Shown here one piece after another: positions 3,263 to 60,636 of a DNA stretch of 64,000 nt; within the stretch, counting starts at the first letter, position 1; each line of letters opens with the position of its first letter. Both the position numbers and the translations under genes were made by a program. The notes under the pieces are model-generated. The model had not been told where the DNA came from. It saw only the letters and a program-made list of their open reading frames with translations, and did no database searches. The stretch is taken from positions 62,001 to 126,000 of the IMG/VR virus record IMGVR_UViG_3300028131_000823. One strand, given 5' to 3'.

Positions 3263-3727
3263 ATGGCAAACGAAGATAATCAATGTGCAGATTTAGAGGT
3301 TAAAGACCACTACTCAGAAGGTAAAGATACTTTCGGCATGATTTACAATAAACAAAGAGAATTGCAAAGTAGATTAGGTTTAAATTATGAAAACTTAACT
3401 CTTAAAGAAATTGCAGAAATGTGGATGGTAAATAAACATGCAATGTCAGATGAGCTTAATGAAATGTTTGATGCCTTAGGCGGTATTAATGATGGAATTG
3501 GTTCAGCTGCTTGGAAATATTGGAAACAGGATAATAAGAAAGCAGAAACAATGACAGTTGCAGATTTATCAGAAGCTGATAGGTTAGAATTATTTTATGA
3601 ATGGATCGATGGCCTTCATTTCTATATGAACTTTGCACTTGCAATTGGAATGACTAGTGAGGATATTGTCAACCTTTATATGGCAAAACAAAAAGAGAAT
3701 ATTAACAGACAAGAAAGAGGATATTAA
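3263..3727 (+). CDS. All-alpha dCTPase/dUTPase (T4 gp56 / dimeric dUTPase family)
   Basis: DELNEMFD...WKYWK...EWIDGLHF...YMAKQKENINRQERGY. Confidence 0.85.
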   Translation: MANEDNQCADLEVKDHYSEGKDTFGMIYNKQRELQSRLGLNYENLTLKEIAEMWMVNKHAMSDELNEMFDALGGINDGIGSAAWKYWKQDNKKAETMTVADLSEADRLELFYEWIDGLHFYMNFALAIGMTSEDIVNLYMAKQKENINRQERGY

Positions 3728-5127
3728 TGCTATTAGATATTGAACAACGAGATAAAGAAGTAATTGTAAGCTATTATAACACAGAAGGTGAAGTAGCCTT
3801 TAAAAGATACCCAGTTGGTCAATTTCAAAATTGGTATGTAACACATGACAAAGATCGTTACAGACATGAAAGCGCACAAAATTGGGATGGTCGACCTGTT
3901 AAATTATCAAATGCAAGACAATATAATAAATTTTCTTTGATCTATTTTATAGATCAACTTCCAGAAGCTGATAAAAAAGAAATACTTGCATATAATAAAC
4001 CAAGAACATATTTCGTAGACATTGAAACAGAGATTGTAGATGGCTTCCCTAAACCAGAAGAGGCTAAGACACGTATCCTGTCATTCTCTATCATTACACC
4101 AGAAAGAAAGGCTATAGTTTTAGGCTTAAAAGATTTGGATGATATGACAGGTATGCAAGATGATACTAACAAATATTTTAAATCATTGGATAGTGATTGG
4201 AGTCTATCATATTATAAGTTTAAGAATGAATATGATATGGTTTATAACTTTATTCATAAGTTTATGCCTAAGTTTCCAATGATGACAGGTTGGAACTTTA
4301 TTAATTATGATTGGCAATATATTGTTAACCGATGTAAGAGACTACAAATTGATATTAGTGAATCTGCAAAAACAGGTGCAGTTGATAGAATGGATGGCAG
4401 ACCACTTCATATGGGAATACTTGATTATATGCAATTGTATGATAAGTATGATCGTTCTGTAAAGGTTAAAGAATCAAATACCCTTGATTATGTTTCAGGT
4501 CAAATTGTAGGTCTTAAAAAGATTAAATACAATGGCGGCTTACAGGAATTGTATGAAAAAGATTTTAGAAAATATATTTATTATAACATTGTCGATTCAT
4601 GTTTGGTATATTATATAGATCAGAAGATTAAAGCAATGGATGTTCTTTTAACTCTTGCAAATATTACGCAAATGCCACTTTATAAAGCAGCAAGCCCAGT
4701 TGCTATGACAGAAGCATTAATGGCAAGAAAGCTTAAAGAACAAAATAAAATTATTGCAACTGAAAGAAGAGATGACAATAGAAAAGACGGTAGTTATGCC
4801 GGCGCTTTTGTTAAAGAACCAATCGTTGGTTTTTATAGTGGAGTAAGTGCATTTGACTTTGCTTCTCTATACCCTTCAATTATGCGACAATTTAATATTT
4901 CTCCTGATTCTTTTGTTGAAACTGTACAAAAACATGAGATAGAAGAAAAAAGAAAAAATAAAGATTATATTGTTTGTGAAAATGGCGCAGTCTATACAAC
5001 AGAAGATTCTGTCTTGAAAAGAATCCTCACCGACCTGTATAGTCAACGTAAGGAATATAAGGCAAAATCATTTGAATATTTTGAGAAGGCAAGATTAATT
5101 CGAAAAAAAATTAGTCAGCTAAAGTAG
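3727..5127 (+). CDS. Family B DNA polymerase, N-terminal subunit (3'-5' exonuclease, motif A, first fingers helix)
   Basis: DIETE exoI, GWNFINYDWQY exoII, YNIVDS exoIII, FDFASLYPS motif A; lacks motifs B and C. Confidence 0.92.
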   Translation: MLLDIEQRDKEVIVSYYNTEGEVAFKRYPVGQFQNWYVTHDKDRYRHESAQNWDGRPVKLSNARQYNKFSLIYFIDQLPEADKKEILAYNKPRTYFVDIETEIVDGFPKPEEAKTRILSFSIITPERKAIVLGLKDLDDMTGMQDDTNKYFKSLDSDWSLSYYKFKNEYDMVYNFIHKFMPKFPMMTGWNFINYDWQYIVNRCKRLQIDISESAKTGAVDRMDGRPLHMGILDYMQLYDKYDRSVKVKESNTLDYVSGQIVGLKKIKYNGGLQELYEKDFRKYIYYNIVDSCLVYYIDQKIKAMDVLLTLANITQMPLYKAASPVAMTEALMARKLKEQNKIIATERRDDNRKDGSYAGAFVKEPIVGFYSGVSAFDFASLYPSIMRQFNISPDSFVETVQKHEIEEKRKNKDYIVCENGAVYTTEDSVLKRILTDLYSQRKEYKAKSFEYFEKARLIRKKISQLK

Positions 5128-10236: not shown

Positions 10237-11445
10237 ATGGAAGTAACTGAAGCTGTAGAAGAAAACATAGATAATTTATCTATAGAAGAATTAGAAGCAC
10301 TTGCTGCTGATTATGACATCATGAGTAATAAGTTCACGGCCTACGAACAGGCCGTGAAACTTTCGTTAAATAGTATCTATGGTGCATTCGGTAATAAGTG
10401 GTTTCATTTTTTTGATATTAACATTGCAGAATCAATTACTCTTCAAGGTCAAAATGCTATTATTTATTCAGAAACAGTATTAAATAAATACTTTAATGAT
10501 TTTTGGCATAAAGACACTAAGTTACATGAAGAACTTGGAATTAAGGTAAAAGGCAAGTTACATAGGCCATCTGTTATTTACATAGATACAGATTCTAACT
10601 ACGTGCAATTTGGTGAAATGTATGATTCTGTAGAATGGTTAGATGAGTCTAAAAAAATGGATGTTACAACATTTACATTAGAAGTTTACAACCGTAGAAT
10701 TAAGGAATTTATTTCTTTAGCGATGAAAAAATATGCAGTTGTTCATAATACTGATAATTTCTTAGTATTTGAACTAGAATCTATTGCATACTCAGGTATT
10801 TGGATGAAAAAGAAAAAGTATATTCAAGATATTGCATGGGAAGATAAGCTTTCTGTAAAAGATAGACACCCTTCTCTTAAAAAGATTAAGACAATTGGCT
10901 ACGATACTATTCAAAGTTCTACTCCATTATTTGCAAGACAAAAATTAGTAGAAGCACTTAAGTTATTGTTCACAAAGGGAACAAAGCCAGGTCCAGTTGA
11001 ATTACAAGAAATGGTACAATTCTTAAAGCAATGTAAAACTGAATTTAAGCTTGTAAATATAGACGATATTTCTTTTAATAGAAGAACTAATAATATCCAA
11101 CAGTATATTATTGACGATAATAAAGAATTTCAAATTGGACTTAAGTGTCCACCAAATGTAAAGGCTGCAGGTTTTTATAACTATCTCTTAAATAATAATT
11201 CTAAATACAAGAATAAGTATAAGATGATAGCAAATGGTGAAAAACTTAGGATCTATAATACAAAGCACCCTATTTGTGATACATTCGCATATTTACCAGG
11301 AGGGCATCCATATGAGATAGCACCTGAAATTGACTACGATACTCAATTTGGAAAATGCATGATTGATCCAATTAACAGAGTTCTTAAAGCAATAGGCTTA
11401 CAAGAATTAGATACAAACCTAATATATGCTTCGGCATTATTTTAA
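10237..11445 (+). CDS. Family B DNA polymerase, C-terminal subunit (motifs B and C, thumb)
   Basis: KLSLNSIYG motif B, YIDTDS motif C, KKKY. Confidence 0.92.
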   Translation: MEVTEAVEENIDNLSIEELEALAADYDIMSNKFTAYEQAVKLSLNSIYGAFGNKWFHFFDINIAESITLQGQNAIIYSETVLNKYFNDFWHKDTKLHEELGIKVKGKLHRPSVIYIDTDSNYVQFGEMYDSVEWLDESKKMDVTTFTLEVYNRRIKEFISLAMKKYAVVHNTDNFLVFELESIAYSGIWMKKKKYIQDIAWEDKLSVKDRHPSLKKIKTIGYDTIQSSTPLFARQKLVEALKLLFTKGTKPGPVELQEMVQFLKQCKTEFKLVNIDDISFNRRTNNIQQYIIDDNKEFQIGLKCPPNVKAAGFYNYLLNNNSKYKNKYKMIANGEKLRIYNTKHPICDTFAYLPGGHPYEIAPEIDYDTQFGKCMIDPINRVLKAIGLQELDTNLIYASALF

Positions 11446-46749: not shown

Positions 46750-46974
46750 ATGAAAACAACAGAAACTACGTTTTATGAATCAAGTACAATTAAATGTTCA
46801 CAATATAATTTTAAAGATAAAATAATGTTAGTAACATTTAATTCAGGGATAACGTATCAATATGATAACGTCGATATTAAAACTTATGAAAAGTTCTCTA
46901 TGGCTGAATCACAAGGTAAGGCCCTAAACGAGCATATTAAAAATACAGAAATTAAAGCAACTAAAGTAGTATAA
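46750..46974 (+). CDS. KTSC domain protein
   Basis: ESSTI...Y......LVTFNSG..YQY..V....Y..F..AESQGK..N..IK. Confidence 0.85.
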   Translation: MKTTETTFYESSTIKCSQYNFKDKIMLVTFNSGITYQYDNVDIKTYEKFSMAESQGKALNEHIKNTEIKATKVV

Positions 46975-46994: not shown

Positions 46995-47132
46995 ATGTCA
47001 AGAGTAAAAGCAGCAGGAAATGGAAATATAGACGGCATAAGCAAGAAAAGAAAAGGAGTTCATGCTAAGTCAAGTTCAAAAAATAAAAATTCAAAAAAAT
47101 ATAAAAAGCCTTATAGTAGAGGAGGAAGATAG
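46995..47132 (+). CDS. Small very basic protein (45 aa, not in ORF track)
   Basis: MSRVKAAG...KKRKGVHAKSSSKNKNSKKYKKPYSRGGR; stop abuts the next ATG. Confidence 0.65.
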   Translation: MSRVKAAGNGNIDGISKKRKGVHAKSSSKNKNSKKYKKPYSRGGR

Positions 47133-47984
47133 ATGAACGTTTTACAAAAATACATTACATATTGTGAAAAGAAAGGAATTGCTTTTCAAATGGATAATCA
47201 TGTAAGACCTTATGACGATACGACACTTTTTTGTCCAGCTGGCATGCAGCAGTTTAAAGATCGTTTTAAAAATCCAGATAATACTACAGTTGCAAATGTT
47301 CAATCCTGTTTAAGACTACAAGACATTGACGAGATAGGAGATGGAAGCCATCTTTTATACTTTAACATGTTAGGTCTTTTTAGTTTTGGAGAAATGACAG
47401 TTAACCAAGCCGTTGAATTTTGGATGGAATTTGTACAAGAAGAACTTAAAATCCAAGTAGACTGTGCAACAATTCATTCTGATAAGTTTGATAATTGGAA
47501 ATGGATGTATGATATTTATAAAACTCCATTAAAATTAGACGATGAATGTATTTGGACTGATGGAGAAATGGGAGGTTATTGTACAGAGTTTTACCATAAA
47601 GGAATAGAAATAGGTAATATAGTAAATACGTCAGATAAATTTATAGATGTCGGGTTTGGACTTGAAAGACTTGAGGCTATAGTTAATGGCACTGAGGTAA
47701 AGAGTGCAAACGAGACACTTGAAGAGACTATTTTAAAGATAGCAGATTCTGGTTATAAGCCAGGTCCACAGAAACAAGGATATGTACTTCGTAAACTTCT
47801 TAGAATCTTATACAATAATAATGGTTATATGGATCATCCATTTTTTAAGAGGGAAGTTGAAAGACAAGAAAAAACAAAACTTAGGTATCTTAGACTTAAG
47901 GAAAAGCACCAAGATAAAGATAAAGAATGGTGGTTTGATACACATGGTATCGATATTGATGAAATGAACGAATTAGGACTATGA
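47133..47984 (+). CDS. alaS: Compact alanyl-tRNA synthetase (catalytic core and tRNA-recognition helices only)
   Basis: TLFCPAGMQQFK, QSCLR, FNMLGLFSFG, IWT.GE.GG.CTEFY, IEIGNIV, IDVGFGLERL, QGYVLRKLLR, FDTHG. Confidence 0.85.
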   Translation: MNVLQKYITYCEKKGIAFQMDNHVRPYDDTTLFCPAGMQQFKDRFKNPDNTTVANVQSCLRLQDIDEIGDGSHLLYFNMLGLFSFGEMTVNQAVEFWMEFVQEELKIQVDCATIHSDKFDNWKWMYDIYKTPLKLDDECIWTDGEMGGYCTEFYHKGIEIGNIVNTSDKFIDVGFGLERLEAIVNGTEVKSANETLEETILKIADSGYKPGPQKQGYVLRKLLRILYNNNGYMDHPFFKREVERQEKTKLRYLRLKEKHQDKDKEWWFDTHGIDIDEMNELGL

Positions 47985-48529
47985 CGATAAAAGAATCTTA
48001 TATAAAGGGTTTATTTGAAATAGTTCCTCAAACATTTAAAGATGATAGAGGAGAATTTGTAGAAACTTATAATGAGGAAAAATTAAAAGACATTATTCCA
48101 TATCAATTTGTACAAGACAATCAAAGTATTTCTAAAAAAGGAGTCTTTAGAGGCATTCATATGCAAATGGGAGATTGGGCTCAAGGTAAACTTGTAAGAG
48201 TTTCAAGCGGTGCAGCCATTGATTATGCTGTAGATCTTAGACCAGATTCTGCGACTTTTGGTCAATGGGATAGTGTAATGTTAACACCTGAAGCAAATAA
48301 TCAATATTGGGTTCCACCTGGATTTGGACATGCATTTTTAGCATTAGAAGATAATACAACATTTTGTTATAAATGTACTAATTTATATAATAAGGAAAGT
48401 GAAGAATGTATAAAGTGGAACGATAGTGATATTTATTTAGAATTTTTACATTATAATGGAGACATATTAGTTTCTGAAAAAGACGAACAAGGAATTACAC
48501 TAAAAGAATTTAAAAACAAACATTGTTAA
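47981..48529 (+). CDS. rmlC: dTDP-4-dehydrorhamnose 3,5-epimerase
   Basis: DDRGEF.E, FVQDNQS.S..GVFRGIH, QGKLVRV, VDLR..S.TFGQW, GFGHAF. Confidence 0.92.
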   Translation: MTIKESYIKGLFEIVPQTFKDDRGEFVETYNEEKLKDIIPYQFVQDNQSISKKGVFRGIHMQMGDWAQGKLVRVSSGAAIDYAVDLRPDSATFGQWDSVMLTPEANNQYWVPPGFGHAFLALEDNTTFCYKCTNLYNKESEECIKWNDSDIYLEFLHYNGDILVSEKDEQGITLKEFKNKHC

Positions 48530-48574: not shown

Positions 48575-49246
48575 ATGAAATATACTAAATTATTTGAAGA
48601 ATTTGTAAATGAAGCTAAATTCTCATTCGGGAAAAAAGGAATTATGCAAAGAGCTCAGGAAATCCTAGACATGGCCAAAGATTCTAAAGATTTAGGCTTT
48701 ATAGAAAAAATAGCAAATAGCGGTAATTTACCAGATTATAATCAACATGTAAATATTAATGTTGAAAAACCAGATCAATATAAAATATTACAAGGAAGCA
48801 ACGCATTGTTATTAGCAAAGGAAATTAAAAAAGTTATTAAAAAATATAAAAAACACGAGGTTGTCGATGAAATGAGAGGACGTTTAGTATCTAAAGACGG
48901 AAAAGTCCTTCATGAATTTAAACCAGATGGAAAAATCCTAGGAGTTGCAAATAGACATGCCATGAATTTACCATTCTTTTCCGCCGATACTAATGAACCA
49001 TCATTTATAATTGGAGTAAACTGCGGTGATAGAATTAATAATAGCATTAAGGAAAAAATGTTTAATGAGGTCTATCAGTTATTATTTGTATTTAACGAGT
49101 CTAACAATATTGATAGAGGTGTAAGTATAGAGGTTATCTCATATGATGATGACCACAGTATTATTGGATTGGCTGTAAGAAGTAAAGATAATTTAATTAG
49201 TGGTTCTGCTGCAATGACGGCAAAATCGATAATGGAAGTAAAGTAA
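48575..49246 (+). CDS. Putative head internal protein
   Basis: Late motif at 48544; leader MKYTKLFEEFVNE. Confidence 0.6.
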   Translation: MKYTKLFEEFVNEAKFSFGKKGIMQRAQEILDMAKDSKDLGFIEKIANSGNLPDYNQHVNINVEKPDQYKILQGSNALLLAKEIKKVIKKYKKHEVVDEMRGRLVSKDGKVLHEFKPDGKILGVANRHAMNLPFFSADTNEPSFIIGVNCGDRINNSIKEKMFNEVYQLLFVFNESNNIDRGVSIEVISYDDDHSIIGLAVRSKDNLISGSAAMTAKSIMEVK

Positions 49247-54983: not shown

Positions 54984-55730
54984 ATGGCACATATACAATG
55001 GGGCGGATATAAATGGCGTCCAAGAGAAAAATGGGGAACATATCACCCTGACAAAACATATTGCTATTATGATAGAAGCGCAATAGAAATAAATGAAAAG
55101 GACGAAATGATCTTAAAGACTCAAATGAATCCAAAAACATTTAAAGGCAAGTCACTTCATTATAATTCAGAATTAACAGAGCTTGAAATTCCAATAGGAG
55201 TAGGTTTAGTATCAAGCGTTGATGGCTTTGGCTATGGATATTTTGAAATAGAAGCTAAGTTACCAACAGGTAAGAATCTATGGCCTGCATTTTGGATGAG
55301 TCCATTTGAAAGTTGGCCACCTGAAATTGATGTCTTTGAGGCTTATTCAAAAAACAAAGAACACTTTTTTCATTTTAATCTTTTTAATCCATTTGGCTTT
55401 TGGAGAGTTGAAACTAATTTTCACTGTGGAAAGCAACCCGATAATTATAATTTAGGAGCAAAGACACATTGGCTAGGTTGGAAAAATCCAGCAAAACACT
55501 TTAATAAATTTGGATGTTTATGGACTGAAGATGTGATTAAAATATTTTATAATGATAGACTAGTTAGAGAGCTTAAAGATCCAAAGTTATTAGATGAATA
55601 TCGTGGTAAATCAATGAATGTAAAAATAAATGCACATGTTGATGCAGGTGTAGATGTAAACAATCACCCTACTTCAGAATATGTTGTAAGAAATTTTAAA
55701 TATAAATCTTTATCAGAGTTAAACAATTAA
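54984..55730 (+). CDS. GH16 glycoside hydrolase (laminarinase-like)
   Basis: YGYFEIEAKLP.G...WPAFWM, EIDVFE catalytic motif. Confidence 0.88.
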   Translation: MAHIQWGGYKWRPREKWGTYHPDKTYCYYDRSAIEINEKDEMILKTQMNPKTFKGKSLHYNSELTELEIPIGVGLVSSVDGFGYGYFEIEAKLPTGKNLWPAFWMSPFESWPPEIDVFEAYSKNKEHFFHFNLFNPFGFWRVETNFHCGKQPDNYNLGAKTHWLGWKNPAKHFNKFGCLWTEDVIKIFYNDRLVRELKDPKLLDEYRGKSMNVKINAHVDAGVDVNNHPTSEYVVRNFKYKSLSELNN

Positions 55731-58508: not shown

Positions 58509-59117
58509 ATGCCAAAAACAAAAATCACTTACAGAGAATTAGCAGAAAACTTCGTAGCAACAAGATCACATAAAGATTATAATGCAATTTACAATAGAGT
58601 AAAGCCAGGTCTTAAAACTTATATCTACAAAATAGTAAAAGACAACAGTATCGCAAGCGACTTAACATCAAATGTGCTAATTAAACTGTGGACTAAAATC
58701 GATCAATATAAACCAGAATGGCAAATTACAACATGGTTATACAAGATCGCATTCAATGAAGCCCTAGGTTATATTAAAGAAAGAAACAAAAAATCATCAC
58801 TTGATCAACTAAGAGAATTCGGTGTGCAAGTAGGTGATGATGGTATTATTAATGGTTCTGCAAATGGACTCTTAATGGAATACGAACAAAAAACTGAAAA
58901 TGACTACATTGAAGAAGACGAAGAGCTTATGCAAAAATACGAAAGTGCACTTAAAGCAATTGTAGATCTTAAGCCAATGTACAAAGAAATCATGGAAGAT
59001 AGACTTTTAAAAGGTATGAAATATGAAGACATTTCTGCAAAACATAAGGTCAATTTACAAACAGTTAAAAACAGAATCCGTAGAGGTAAAACATTAATCG
59101 CAGAAAAAATATCATAA
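58509..59117 (+). CDS. ECF-type (group 4) sigma factor
   Basis: Region 2 ASDL...V.IKLW....Y......TWLYKIA.N; region 4 GMKYEDIS......TVKNRIRRG. Confidence 0.88.
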   Translation: MPKTKITYRELAENFVATRSHKDYNAIYNRVKPGLKTYIYKIVKDNSIASDLTSNVLIKLWTKIDQYKPEWQITTWLYKIAFNEALGYIKERNKKSSLDQLREFGVQVGDDGIINGSANGLLMEYEQKTENDYIEEDEELMQKYESALKAIVDLKPMYKEIMEDRLLKGMKYEDISAKHKVNLQTVKNRIRRGKTLIAEKIS

Positions 59118-59720: not shown

Positions 59721-59794
59721 GGGGGTATAGCTCAGTTGGCTAGAGCGCCTGCCTTGCACGCAGGAGGCCGTGGGTTCGAATCCCTCTACCTCCA
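59721..59794 (+). tRNA. tRNA-Ala(UGC)
   Basis: Cloverleaf GGGGGTA/TACCTCC with G3:U70, discriminator A, anticodon TGC; no encoded CCA. Confidence 0.92.
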
Positions 59795-59805
59795 CTATCT
59801 TAATT

Positions 59806-60636
59806 ATGAAAAATCTTATATTAACCGCTAGTCTTGGAGATAGACCTTTTAAAAAATATGCGTTCTTTTCAATGGAAGAATATGCTAAAAAAACAAATGC
59901 AGATTTTATAGTAGCAGAAGATATAGAAATTCCAAAAGAATTAAAAGAACTAAAAGTAGGTAGAGGAAATAATACATCGTATTTAAAAAAGATACTGTGG
60001 ATAAGAAAATATTTAAAAGAATACGATAAAGTATTATGGCTAGATGACACATGTTACGTGAATCCAAATTGTCCAAATTTATTTAATTTTGTTCCAAGTG
60101 GATATGTGGCAGCTGCTTCTGAATCTCAATTAATGTATGTTGGCTTTAAAGAAGCATATAAGGATTTTTTAAAAAGGTGGACCATTTATAAAAACGAAAG
60201 AGACACTACATTTAATACAGGTGTTATTTTATATACTAAAGAGTGTAAACATATGTTTAGTAATGATAATTTACTAAATACAATTGCTAAATTGTGTTTG
60301 ACTTCTCAATGGCCACAACAATTACTTACAAACTATTTGATAATAATTAATAATATTCCAAGAATTGTTTTAGATTCTAAATTTAATAGAATGCATATAT
60401 GTGAAAAATACGAACCATATATAGAAAGACGCGAATTAATTAGTGAGAAAGAAGGTAAAATAAAAGACGTGTCAGATGAATTTTTTAAAAAAAATTTTAA
60501 ATTTAATAAAAAGCTTTTAAAACAAGATCCATTTGTATATGAGGCATTTATATATCACCTTGCAGGAAAATCAAAAGAAGTTAGAGAAAACCTTCTTAAA
60601 CAAATACATAAAACTTTTTCAAAAGTAAAAATATGA
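59806..60636 (+). CDS. GT-A glycosyltransferase (GT8/GT34-like)
   Basis: YAKKTNADF, YDKVLWLDD, FNTGVILY, QQLL. Confidence 0.7.
   Translation: MKNLILTASLGDRPFKKYAFFSMEEYAKKTNADFIVAEDIEIPKELKELKVGRGNNTSYLKKILWIRKYLKEYDKVLWLDDTCYVNPNCPNLFNFVPSGYVAAASESQLMYVGFKEAYKDFLKRWTIYKNERDTTFNTGVILYTKECKHMFSNDNLLNTIAKLCLTSQWPQQLLTNYLIIINNIPRIVLDSKFNRMHICEKYEPYIERRELISEKEGKIKDVSDEFFKKNFKFNKKLLKQDPFVYEAFIYHLAGKSKEVRENLLKQIHKTFSKVKI

What the first reader, a model, noticed from the sequence alone, without database searches (positions are those of the whole stretch)
47133..47984. Phage-encoded minimal alanyl-tRNA synthetase lacking editing and C-Ala domains
Seen: a 283-aa ORF carrying AlaRS class II motifs in order. 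By-eye alignment to E. coli AlaRS (numbering from memory) retains R69 (CLR), W170, E209/N212 (IEIGN), D235/G237 (IDVGFGLERL), the GYVLRK helix and the YDTYG-like motif FDTHG (about D400, which reads G3:U70). The protein stops there. The Asn of SNE (about N303, the other G3:U70 contact) appears replaced by Pro (PGPQKQGY). Known: aaRS genes are rare in phages, and bacterial AlaRS is about 870 aa with a cis-editing domain. Inference: this is an unusually small, non-editing alanine ligase. It could keep tRNA-Ala charged when host translation is attacked, mischarge Ser/Gly, have relaxed tRNA specificity, or alanylate a non-tRNA acceptor. It sits in a middle-promoter operon with KTSC, a basic peptide and rmlC.
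Basis: partly seen in the sequence, partly recalled or inferred. Interest (0 to 1): 0.8.

Follow-up and report, generated by a model that had tools for sequence, protein, structure and literature searches.

The report
Miniature alanyl-tRNA synthetase in jumbo phage
A large marine T4-like phage carries a well-conserved 283-residue, loop-trimmed version of alanyl-tRNA synthetase that keeps every alanine-activating residue but has no proofreading or C-terminal tRNA-binding domains; it belongs to a big uncharacterised family in jumbo phages and Alphaproteobacteria that may be the smallest natural AlaRS.

Summary
ORF 47133-47984 (+) encodes a 283-aa protein homologous to the AlaRS aminoacylation and tRNA-recognition domains. 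It aligns globally to E. coli AlaRS 6-414, and the predicted fold (pLDDT 91) matches AlaRS441 best. It differs by ten loop deletions (107 aa) and by lacking everything after residue 414. It is not a fragment: more than 1,300 database clusters are about 280 aa, dN/dS is 0.04-0.10, and both domains are equally constrained. Alanine-activation residues are invariant even in 32%-identical members. The canonical G3:U70-reading positions vary (window: Pro for N303; Asp kept for D400). No editing/C-Ala half was found in the window, and none on carrier contigs. No protein is a recurrent neighbour. tRNA genes are, with tRNA-Ala enriched near the gene (OR 4.7, p=5e-4), mostly G3:U70/A73, plus tmRNA in three loci. 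The window has its own G3:U70 tRNA-Ala. Homologues also sit in Rhizobium and other Alphaproteobacteria behind a conserved out-of-frame uORF. Best reading: a stand-alone, non-editing alanine-activating enzyme that probably charges tRNA-Ala acceptor stems. Activity is untested. The 'middle-promoter operon with rmlC' is not supported. New variant of a known kind.

The parts
47133..47984 (+). Mini-AlaRS ORF, 283 aa plus stop; the stop overlaps the rmlC start (ATGA)
47133..47702 (+). Residues 1-190: trimmed class II aminoacylation domain, equivalent to E. coli AlaRS about 6-250 minus six deleted loops
   Evidence: hhalign; AlphaFold secondary structure; Foldseek
47301..47387 (+). Motif 2 region, residues 57-85 (Q57, C59, R61=R69, D64, G69, H73, F77, M79, G81, F83, S84), all invariant or nearly so
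47547..47624 (+). Alanine/ATP pocket strands, residues 139-164: W141=W170, E152, E159=E209, N162=N212, V164=V214
47643..47669 (+). Motif 3, residues 171-179 (I-D-V-G-F-G-L-E-R): D172=D235, G174=G237, R179 = motif 3 Arg
47703..47981 (+). Residues 191-283: shortened helical remnant of the tRNA-recognition domain (E. coli about 251-414); as constrained as the catalytic domain
47760..47804 (+). Residues 210-224: P-G-P-Q-K-Q-G-Y-V-L-R-K-L-L-R, the acceptor-stem recognition helix; P212 stands at the N303 position
47928..47948 (+). Residues 266-272: W-W-F-D-T-H-G, equivalent of E. coli L-Y-D-T-Y-G; D269=D400
47120..47126 (+). AGGAGGA Shine-Dalgarno for the mini-AlaRS, lying inside the 3' end of the upstream 45-aa ORF, whose TAG stop directly abuts the ATG
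   Evidence: sequence read
59721..59795 (+). Phage tRNA-Ala(UGC) with G3:U70 and A73, a candidate substrate 11.7 kb downstream
46750..46974 (+). KTSC-domain ORF (context only; a neighbour only in the >=91% identity clade)
46995..47132 (+). 45-aa highly basic ORF (context only; conserved only in the close clade, no family match)
47981..48529 (+). rmlC (dTDP-4-dehydrorhamnose 3,5-epimerase), context only; present next to the gene in 4 of 77 viral loci

Best explanation
The gene encodes a stand-alone, miniaturised, non-editing alanyl-tRNA synthetase. Step 1 is inferred from conserved active-site residues: the trimmed class II core binds ATP and L-alanine and forms alanyl-adenylate, using R61 (motif 2), E159, N162, V164, W141, D172, G174 and R179 (motif 3). 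Step 2 is inferred from the retained helical subdomain and from genomic association: the GYVLRK helix and the WWFDTHG loop dock on the acceptor stem of G3:U70/A73 RNAs, and alanine is transferred to A76. Those RNAs would be the phage's own and the host's tRNA-Ala, and possibly tmRNA. There is no elbow binding because C-Ala is absent, and no proofreading because the editing domain is absent. The biological role is also inferred. In this phage the gene follows the tail genes with no terminator between them, and it would add Ala-tRNA charging capacity during infection. The major capsid protein is 14.5% Ala and the tape measure 11.9%, and about 90% of Ala codons are GCA or GCU, which the phage tRNA-Ala(UGC) reads.
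For: - **Homology and fold:** Pfam PF01411; PDB AlaRS fragments; AlphaFold pLDDT 91.1 and pTM 0.83; best structural match E. coli AlaRS441, TMq 0.77; global profile alignment to E. coli 6-414, E 2.5e-62, with 40 of 52 canonical >=90%-conserved positions identical.
- **Activation residues:** invariant in 67 close members and in 26 divergent members down to 32% identity.
- **Miniaturisation pattern:** ten clean loop deletions and no insertions.
- **Selection:** dN/dS 0.04-0.10. The C-terminal domain is as constrained as the catalytic one.
- **Family size:** 1,314 clusters, the top ones all about 280 aa; 2,374 representatives at E<1e-3, with a score gap to canonical AlaRS.
- **Genomic association:** the gene often lies in tRNA arrays. 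tRNA-Ala is enriched within 2 kb (16 of 72 against 8 of 140, OR 4.7, p=5e-4 after de-duplication). 23 of 28 flanking tRNA-Ala genes have G3:U70 plus A73. tmRNA lies within 2 kb in three loci. The window has its own G3:U70 tRNA-Ala.
- **No partner:** no recurrent protein neighbour and no editing half in the window or on carrier contigs.
- **Alanine demand:**
- **Expression:** the region is present in four seawater metatranscriptome assemblies.
Against: - No biochemical data exist for any family member.
- The protein ends at the equivalent of E. coli residue 414. It is therefore shorter than the N461 fragment, which itself binds tRNA-Ala poorly and fails to complement. Tight acceptor binding would need compensating features that I cannot demonstrate.
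- The canonical G3:U70-reading positions are not conserved across the family (position 212 is P/N/A/S/H; position 269 is D/E/N/other).
- The C-terminal FDTHG equivalence rests on a moderate local score.
- About half of the viral loci show no tRNA within 10 kb.
- The bacteria that carry a homologue are expected, on general knowledge, to have a canonical alaS as well, so the function may not be simple redundancy.
- The metatranscriptome contigs could derive from DNA carry-over.
Confidence: 0.55

Rival explanations
1. It is an alanine-adenylating enzyme whose acceptor is not tRNA. It makes Ala-AMP (or activates a close analogue such as Gly, Ser or lactate) and transfers it to a protein, a carrier protein or a small molecule, as other aaRS paralogues do.
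For: Activation residues are the most strictly conserved part, whereas the G3:U70-reading positions vary. The protein is shorter than the minimal E. coli charging fragment. The homologues in bacteria would be paralogues alongside the canonical AlaRS those bacteria are expected to have. The aaRS-paralogue literature has precedents for non-tRNA acceptors (PMC9437257).
Against: No carrier protein, biosynthetic gene or other conserved partner is found next to it, either in 32 representative viral loci or across bacterial genera. The only recurrent neighbours are tRNA genes, with tRNA-Ala enriched. The tRNA-recognition helix and the WWFDTHG loop are among the best-conserved segments (0.80).
Confidence: 0.2
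2. It is one subunit of a split synthetase. It needs a separately encoded partner for tRNA binding or editing, like N. equitans AlaRS-alpha/beta or the bacterial GlyRS alpha/beta, or it recruits the host AlaRS or AlaX in trans.
For: The size and the layout (catalytic core plus a small helical domain) resemble the GlyRS alpha-subunit, the second-best fold match at TM about 0.47. N. equitans AlaRS-alpha alone is only weakly active (PMC11392972). Only +/-10 kb of most carrier contigs could be inspected.
Against: No ORF in the 64-kb window resembles the AlaRS C-terminal half. None of the 35 viral contigs encoding such a half carries the mini gene. No protein family recurs near the gene. The bacterial copies are solitary.
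Confidence: 0.1
3. It is an AcmF-like Ala-tRNA-dependent alanyl transferase. It binds already charged Ala-tRNA-Ala and passes the alanine to another molecule.
For: AcmF is also a truncated AlaRS-like protein with only the aminoacylation and tRNA-recognition domains (PMC12945691). The link with tRNA-Ala genes would fit this too.
Against: AcmF has lost most ATP- and Ala-activation residues and carries N219Q and D232E. The phage family keeps the equivalent N162 and D172, plus R61 and R179, invariant. No biosynthetic cluster is present.
Confidence: 0.05
4. It is a non-catalytic binder or decoy for tRNA-Ala or tmRNA, for example a regulator or a counter-defence protein, or else a decaying gene fragment.
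For: The truncated architecture. aaRS-derived domains are sometimes reused as RNA binders.
Against: The invariance of every catalytic residue over a family reaching 32% identity is not expected for a mere binder. dN/dS of 0.04-0.10 and hundreds of intact copies of about 280 aa exclude decay. There is no defence-system match.
Confidence: 0.04

Closest known systems
E. coli AlaRS N-terminal fragments (AlaRS441 crystal fragment, PDB 3HXU; N461)
   Same: Same fold and domain order, with the best structural match (TMq 0.77). Same motif 2, motif 3 and alanine-pocket residues. Bacterial-type sequence.
   Different: The phage protein is natural rather than engineered. It is 107 residues shorter within the shared span through ten loop deletions, and it stops at the equivalent of residue 414. 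W211 is replaced by Gly and N169 by Cys. N461 binds tRNA poorly and does not complement.
Tupanvirus mini-AlaRS (TuAlaRS, 461 aa; PMC10036535)
   Same: Virus-encoded. [quoted passage not shown] Has Pro at the conserved Asn position of the recognition helix. The virus also encodes G3:U70 tRNA-Ala genes.
   Different: TuAlaRS has a full-size catalytic plus tRNA-recognition module (461 aa), is related to its eukaryotic host's enzyme, and has Thr instead of the conserved Asp. The phage protein has 283 aa, keeps the Asp, and belongs to a separate clade found in phages and Alphaproteobacteria. TuAlaRS is experimentally active; this protein is untested.
AcmF, AlaRS-like alanyl transferase of ascamycin biosynthesis (PMC12945691)
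   Same: A truncated AlaRS-like protein with only the aminoacylation and tRNA-recognition domains.
   Different: AcmF has lost the activation residues (N219Q, D232E), uses Ala-tRNA-Ala as donor, and sits in a biosynthetic cluster. The phage family keeps those residues invariant and has no cluster.
Nanoarchaeum equitans split AlaRS (alpha subunit; PMC11392972)
   Same: A natural AlaRS piece without an editing domain. Alone it shows weak, G3:U70-independent minihelix charging.
   Different: It works with a beta subunit encoded elsewhere. No beta-like gene was found for the phage family.
Bacterial GlyRS alpha-subunit (about 290 aa)
   Same: Similar size and layout, and the second-best fold class (TM about 0.45-0.48).
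   Different: Sequence profiles assign the phage protein to AlaRS, not GlyRS. GlyRS-alpha depends on a beta subunit.

Membership tests
Canonical alanine--tRNA ligase (alaS; TIGR00344 equivalog) | Class II catalytic core with AlaRS motif 2, motif 3 and the alanine pocket (R69, W170, N212, V214, D235, G237) | tested here: met
   All are present and invariant
Canonical alanine--tRNA ligase (alaS; TIGR00344 equivalog) | Complete tRNA-recognition domain with the G3:U70-reading Asn (N303) and Asp (D400) | tested here: inconclusive
   The domain is shortened and ends at E. coli 414. The window protein has P212 and D269. These positions vary across the family
Canonical alanine--tRNA ligase (alaS; TIGR00344 equivalog) | Editing domain (tRNA_SAD, HxxxH/CxxxH) | tested here: not met
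   Absent from the protein, from the window and from carrier contigs
Canonical alanine--tRNA ligase (alaS; TIGR00344 equivalog) | C-Ala (DHHA1-like) domain | tested here: not met
   Absent
Canonical alanine--tRNA ligase (alaS; TIGR00344 equivalog) | Score above the curated equivalog cut-off | tested here: not met
   82.8 bits against a cutoff of 457
Canonical alanine--tRNA ligase (alaS; TIGR00344 equivalog) | Alanylation of tRNA-Ala | not testable with these tools
   Needs biochemistry
Viral mini-AlaRS (TuAlaRS type) | Only aminoacylation plus tRNA-recognition domains; no editing or C-Ala domain | tested here: met
Viral mini-AlaRS (TuAlaRS type) | Full-length (about 460 aa) aminoacylation module, including the C-terminal helices of the recognition domain | tested here: not met
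   283 aa; ten deletions; ends at E. coli 414; TuAlaRS has 461 aa
Viral mini-AlaRS (TuAlaRS type) | Common descent with TuAlaRS (related to the eukaryotic host's AlaRS) | tested here: inconclusive
   The family forms its own clade against ten canonical AlaRS sequences drawn from a metagenome and genome protein database. The giant-virus AlaRS entries in BFVD are 464-513 aa and only structurally similar. TuAlaRS itself was not in the tree.
AcmF-like Ala-tRNA-dependent transferases | Loss of ATP and alanine activation residues (N to Q, D to E) | tested here: not met
   N162 and D172 are invariant, unlike AcmF
Split AlaRS (N. equitans alpha/beta) or GlyRS alpha/beta type | A separately encoded partner subunit | tested here: not met
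   None in the window, none on carrier contigs, and no recurrent neighbour. Whole genomes were not inspected.

The most novel reading that the evidence does not exclude
The roughly 280-aa protein is by itself a complete alanyl-RNA synthetase, about 40% smaller than any AlaRS shown to be active. It would recognise only the top of the acceptor stem, in a way that no longer depends on the canonical Asn/Asp pair. Jumbo phages would use it together with their own tRNA-Ala, and in some lineages tmRNA. Alphaproteobacteria would have domesticated it under an unusual uORF-coupled translational control. It would be a natural minimal 'operational RNA code' enzyme.
Probability: 0.35. Interest if true: 0.8.

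Novelty: new variant of a known kind. Interest (0 to 1): 0.62.

Why it matters
AlaRS is noted for keeping the same four-domain architecture throughout life. The only characterised natural exception retrieved in my searches is the 461-aa Tupanvirus enzyme. If this widespread, strongly conserved 280-aa form is active, it would do three things. First, it would define the true minimal unit for alanine activation and acceptor-stem recognition. Second, it would test how G3:U70 can be read without the canonical residues and without C-Ala. Third, it would show that large phages, and some bacteria, run a proofreading-free alanine charging route alongside the canonical enzyme. It would also be a compact scaffold for engineering. 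If it is not a tRNA synthetase, it is a new alanine-adenylating paralogue whose acceptor is unknown, which is also worth finding.

Tried and rejected
- **Megablast against GenBank phages:** no match. tblastn found only one full-length relative, the 635-kb uncultured phage LR745206.1. Cultured phages give no handle.
- **Promoter and terminator scan:** counts at chance level, so nothing can be said about a 'middle promoter'.
- **PHROGs:** no family for the short form, only a weak hit to a full-length AlaRS profile of unknown function.
- **PADLOC:** no defence-system match.
- **Conserved neighbours:** none among proteins, either in bacteria or in phages. KTSC, the basic peptide and rmlC are lineage-specific, so I dropped the idea that they form a functional unit with the gene.
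- **Longer family members:** the extra residues carry no recognisable domain.
- **Split-enzyme search:** negative.
- **Bacterial leader:** I looked for a -1 slippery heptamer by eye and found none. Termination-reinitiation at an overlapping near-cognate codon fits better, but it is untested.
- **First acceptor-stem script:** it mis-registered tRNAs whose genes encode CCA. I corrected it.
- **The 88-nt 'tRNA-Ala(AGC)' calls:** the anticodon stem is mismatched, so I did not count them as genuine.
- **Literature searches:** no paper describing this short family was found. One query was rejected for syntax.

Full report
**1. Observation**

The window contains an ATG-initiated ORF of 283 codons at 47133-47984 on the + strand. 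It matches Pfam tRNA-synt_2c at 81.6 bits (cutoff 30.3), but only over profile positions 2-189 of 552. It scores far below the NCBIfam alaS equivalog cutoff, 82.8 against 457. Its best sequence matches among solved structures are AlaRS catalytic fragments.

R69, W170, N212, D235 and G237 follow mature-protein numbering, while N303 and D400 follow Met1 numbering.

**2. What it is**

A profile of 67 family members aligns to a profile of 25 canonical AlaRS sequences with probability 100% (E 6.9e-46). In global mode, window residues 1-283 align to E. coli 6-414 (E 2.5e-62).

The equivalences are:
- R61 = R69
- W141 = W170
- E159 = E209
- N162 = N212
- V164 = V214
- D172 = D235
- G174 = G237
- R179 = the motif 3 arginine
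- GYVLRK (216-221) = GYVLRR
- P212 = N303
- D269 = D400

The last equivalence has a moderate local score (P = 2.5e-4). Of 52 positions that are at least 90% conserved in canonical AlaRS over this span, 40 are identical in the mini family, 3 are deleted and 9 are changed.

An AlphaFold model built on the family alignment is confident (pLDDT 91.1, pTM 0.83). Its best structural matches are AlaRS catalytic fragments, led by E. coli AlaRS441 (TMq 0.77, about 405 alignment columns). GlyRS alpha-subunits come a distant second at about 0.47. Among predicted viral structures, only giant-virus AlaRS proteins of 464-513 aa resemble it.

**3. Anatomy**

Compared with E. coli 6-414, the protein differs by ten deletions of 4-27 residues, 107 in total, and has no insertion of three or more residues. 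It ends at the equivalent of residue 414. It therefore lacks the last part of the tRNA-recognition domain, the editing domain and C-Ala.

This pattern is loop trimming around an intact core. It is what a streamlined enzyme looks like, not a decaying one.

**4. The family**

The large protein database returns 1,314 clusters at E <= 1e-3, and the 120 best are all 245-309 aa. An exhaustive search of 50%-identity representatives finds full-length members of about 265-330 aa down to 32% identity. They score 120-338 bits, whereas canonical AlaRS enzymes score about 90 bits or less.

Against close relatives, dN/dS is 0.04-0.10. The C-terminal helical part is as constrained as the catalytic part. Mean conservation is 0.67 against 0.70, the GYVLR and WWFDTHG segments reach 0.80, and dN/dS is 0.04-0.14 in both.

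In 26 divergent representatives, the activation residues R61, W141, E152, E159, V164, D172, G174, G176 and R179 are present in 26 of 26, and N162 in 25 of 26. The G3:U70-reading positions vary: position 212 is P 9, N 7, A 3, S 3, H 2, plus one Q and one D; position 269 is D 14, E 7, N 2, plus one each of H, G and T. In the closer set, Asn is the commonest residue at position 212 (37 of 67) and Pro marks the window's subclade (23 of 67).

Databases label these proteins 'alanine--tRNA ligase-related protein'. I found no paper that characterises them.

**5. Genomic context**

The window comes from a T4-like myovirus. It carries portal gp20, a prohead protease, MCP gp23, terminase, sheath, UvsX-like, gp41-like, gp46/47-like, clamp loader, RNase H, RNR and DNA ligase genes. 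Its own contig in IMG/VR is 204,977 bp (L010, 100% identity).

The gene follows the tape-measure gene, a KTSC ORF and a 45-aa basic ORF, and it overlaps the start of rmlC. No terminator-like site lies between these genes, and a GGAGG sits 7 nt before the ATG. These neighbours are lineage-specific: KTSC, the basic ORF and the tape measure occur in 8 of 77 viral loci, and rmlC in 4 of 77. A 91%-identical relative has no rmlC. Other carriers, on contigs up to 607 kb, place the gene next to RNR and adenylate kinase or among unknown genes. No protein family recurs near it in 32 representative loci.

tRNA genes do recur.
- **tRNA-Ala share by distance:** before de-duplication, tRNA-Ala made up 15 of 53 tRNA and tmRNA genes within 1 kb, 22 of 94 within 2 kb, and 11 of 158 between 2 and 10 kb.
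- **After de-duplication to 36 clusters:** 16 of 72 against 8 of 140 (odds ratio 4.7, Fisher p = 5e-4).
- **Examples:** three tRNA-Ala isoacceptors lie directly upstream in L066, one lies 65 bp upstream in L069, and one abuts the stop codon in L050.
- **Identity elements:** 23 of 28 distinct flanking tRNA-Ala genes have G3:U70 and A73.
- **tmRNA:** a permuted tmRNA lies about 300 bp downstream in L020 and L023, and a standard tmRNA lies 1.9 kb away in L082. That tmRNA is alanylated by AlaRS is established knowledge.
- **In the window:** a tRNA-Ala(UGC) with G3:U70 and A73 sits at 59721-59795.

No ORF in the window resembles the AlaRS C-terminal half. None of the 35 viral contigs that encode such a half carries the mini gene.

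**6. Cellular homologues**

The same family, at 41-56% identity, is present in many Rhizobium, Neorhizobium, Inquilinus, Phyllobacterium, Caulobacteraceae and other genomes. No neighbouring gene is conserved between genera.

In a tree, the mini family is monophyletic against canonical AlaRS (support 100). The deepest branch is viral, and most alphaproteobacterial copies (9 of 11 bacterial rows) fall in one subclade that also holds phage sequences (support 96). This suggests a phage-centred family with transfer into bacteria. The long outgroup branch makes the direction tentative.

The distribution in Alphaproteobacteria, the permuted tmRNA in the sister phage clade, and the 30% G+C marine setting hint at an alphaproteobacterial host rather than Bacteroidota. 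This is only a hint.

**7. Expression**

Contigs assembled from four seawater metatranscriptome libraries carry the region with no mismatches and bridge the gene junctions. DNA carry-over cannot be excluded, so this is weak support.

**8. Mechanism and rivals**

The evidence strongly supports an enzyme that forms alanyl-adenylate. I put that part at about 0.85.

[quoted passage not shown] TuAlaRS has Pro at the same position and still charges tRNA-Ala and microhelices.

Three points count against it. The protein is shorter than E. coli N461, which binds tRNA poorly. The recognition positions vary. The bacteria that carry a homologue are expected, on general knowledge, to have a canonical AlaRS as well.

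A demand-side rationale exists. The capsid protein is 14.5% Ala and the tape measure 11.9%, against 6.4% overall, and about 90% of Ala codons are GCA or GCU.

The rivals are:
- **A non-tRNA acceptor.** Weakened by the absence of any conserved partner.
- **A split enzyme.** No partner was found.
- **An AcmF-like transferase.** Excluded by the retained N162 and D172.
- **A non-catalytic binder or a pseudogene.** Excluded by the conservation and selection data.

**9. Comparison and novelty**

It works like the aminoacylation module of AlaRS. It is not a member of the canonical alaS equivalog: the editing domain, C-Ala and the score cutoff are all not met. It is also not of the TuAlaRS type, given its size, lineage and truncated recognition domain.

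It is best described as a new, miniaturised variant of AlaRS. It forms a large uncharacterised family, not a peculiarity of this phage.

Noticed in passing
L088:9975-10010, L101:9975-10010 and about 65 other bacterial loci (L087-L164): The alphaproteobacterial homologues have no canonical in-frame start codon. Instead there is a strongly conserved leader: a perfect Shine-Dalgarno (AGGAGG), an ATG in the +1 frame, and a 6-7-codon uORF (M-[ST]-x-R-[DE]-A-stop). The uORF stop is kept as TGA, TAA or TAG, and it overlaps an in-frame near-cognate codon (CTG, TTG, ATA or ATC). This looks like termination-reinitiation coupling or another translational control. I saw no -1 slippery heptamer.
   Followed up: partly
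window 3727-5127 and 10237-11445: The B-family DNA polymerase is split into two ORFs about 5 kb apart. One carries the exonuclease domain plus the start of the polymerase domain, and the other carries the rest of the polymerase domain. They are separated by the two RNR subunit genes and two unknown ORFs. From memory, split gene 43 is known in some T4-like phages.
   Followed up: no
L020:11081-11386, L023:11083-11388, L082:2291-2670: Phage-encoded tmRNAs lie within 2 kb of the mini-AlaRS gene. Two are of the permuted (two-piece) type (Rfam RF04321) with the predicted tag GNQNHMSIAA. From memory, permuted tmRNA is typical of Alphaproteobacteria, some Betaproteobacteria and cyanobacteria, so this is a host hint.
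   Followed up: partly
L064:8561-8648, L067:9341-9428, L080:9332-9419: ARAGORN calls an 88-nt 'tRNA-Ala(AGC)' with a long variable arm, T3:A70 and a mismatched anticodon stem, next to the mini-AlaRS. The anticodon assignment is doubtful. It may be a type II tRNA (Ser, Leu or Tyr-like) or an unusual tRNA.
   Followed up: partly
window 58509-59117: A phage-encoded sigma factor with Sigma70 region 2 and region 4 domains (ECF-like) lies just upstream of the tRNA-Ala gene.
   Followed up: no
window 54984-55730 and 59770-60636: There is a glycoside hydrolase family 16 gene and a family 8 glycosyltransferase. Together with rmlC (47981-48529), they indicate sugar-related auxiliary functions in this phage. 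The listed GTG start of the glycosyltransferase ORF overlaps the 3' end of tRNA-Ala, so its true start is probably further downstream.
   Followed up: no
window 46995-47132: A 45-aa, extremely basic ORF (rich in K, R, S and N) is translationally coupled to the mini-AlaRS. It is conserved at only 60-87% identity in the non-identical relatives whose AlaRS is 91-100% identical, and it has no family match. Whether it is a real protein, for example an RNA-binding helper, is open.
   Followed up: partly
window 48575-48616: In the metatranscriptome assemblies, contigs of related phages share only this 42-nt stretch at the start of ORF 48575-49246 and diverge on both sides. This suggests a mosaic recombination junction just downstream of rmlC.
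   Followed up: no
L005:2574-7983: In a 393-kb carrier contig, the RNR large-subunit gene upstream of the mini-AlaRS is broken into pieces. The pieces are interspersed with intein-splicing, DUF723 and GIY-YIG-like ORFs.
   Followed up: no
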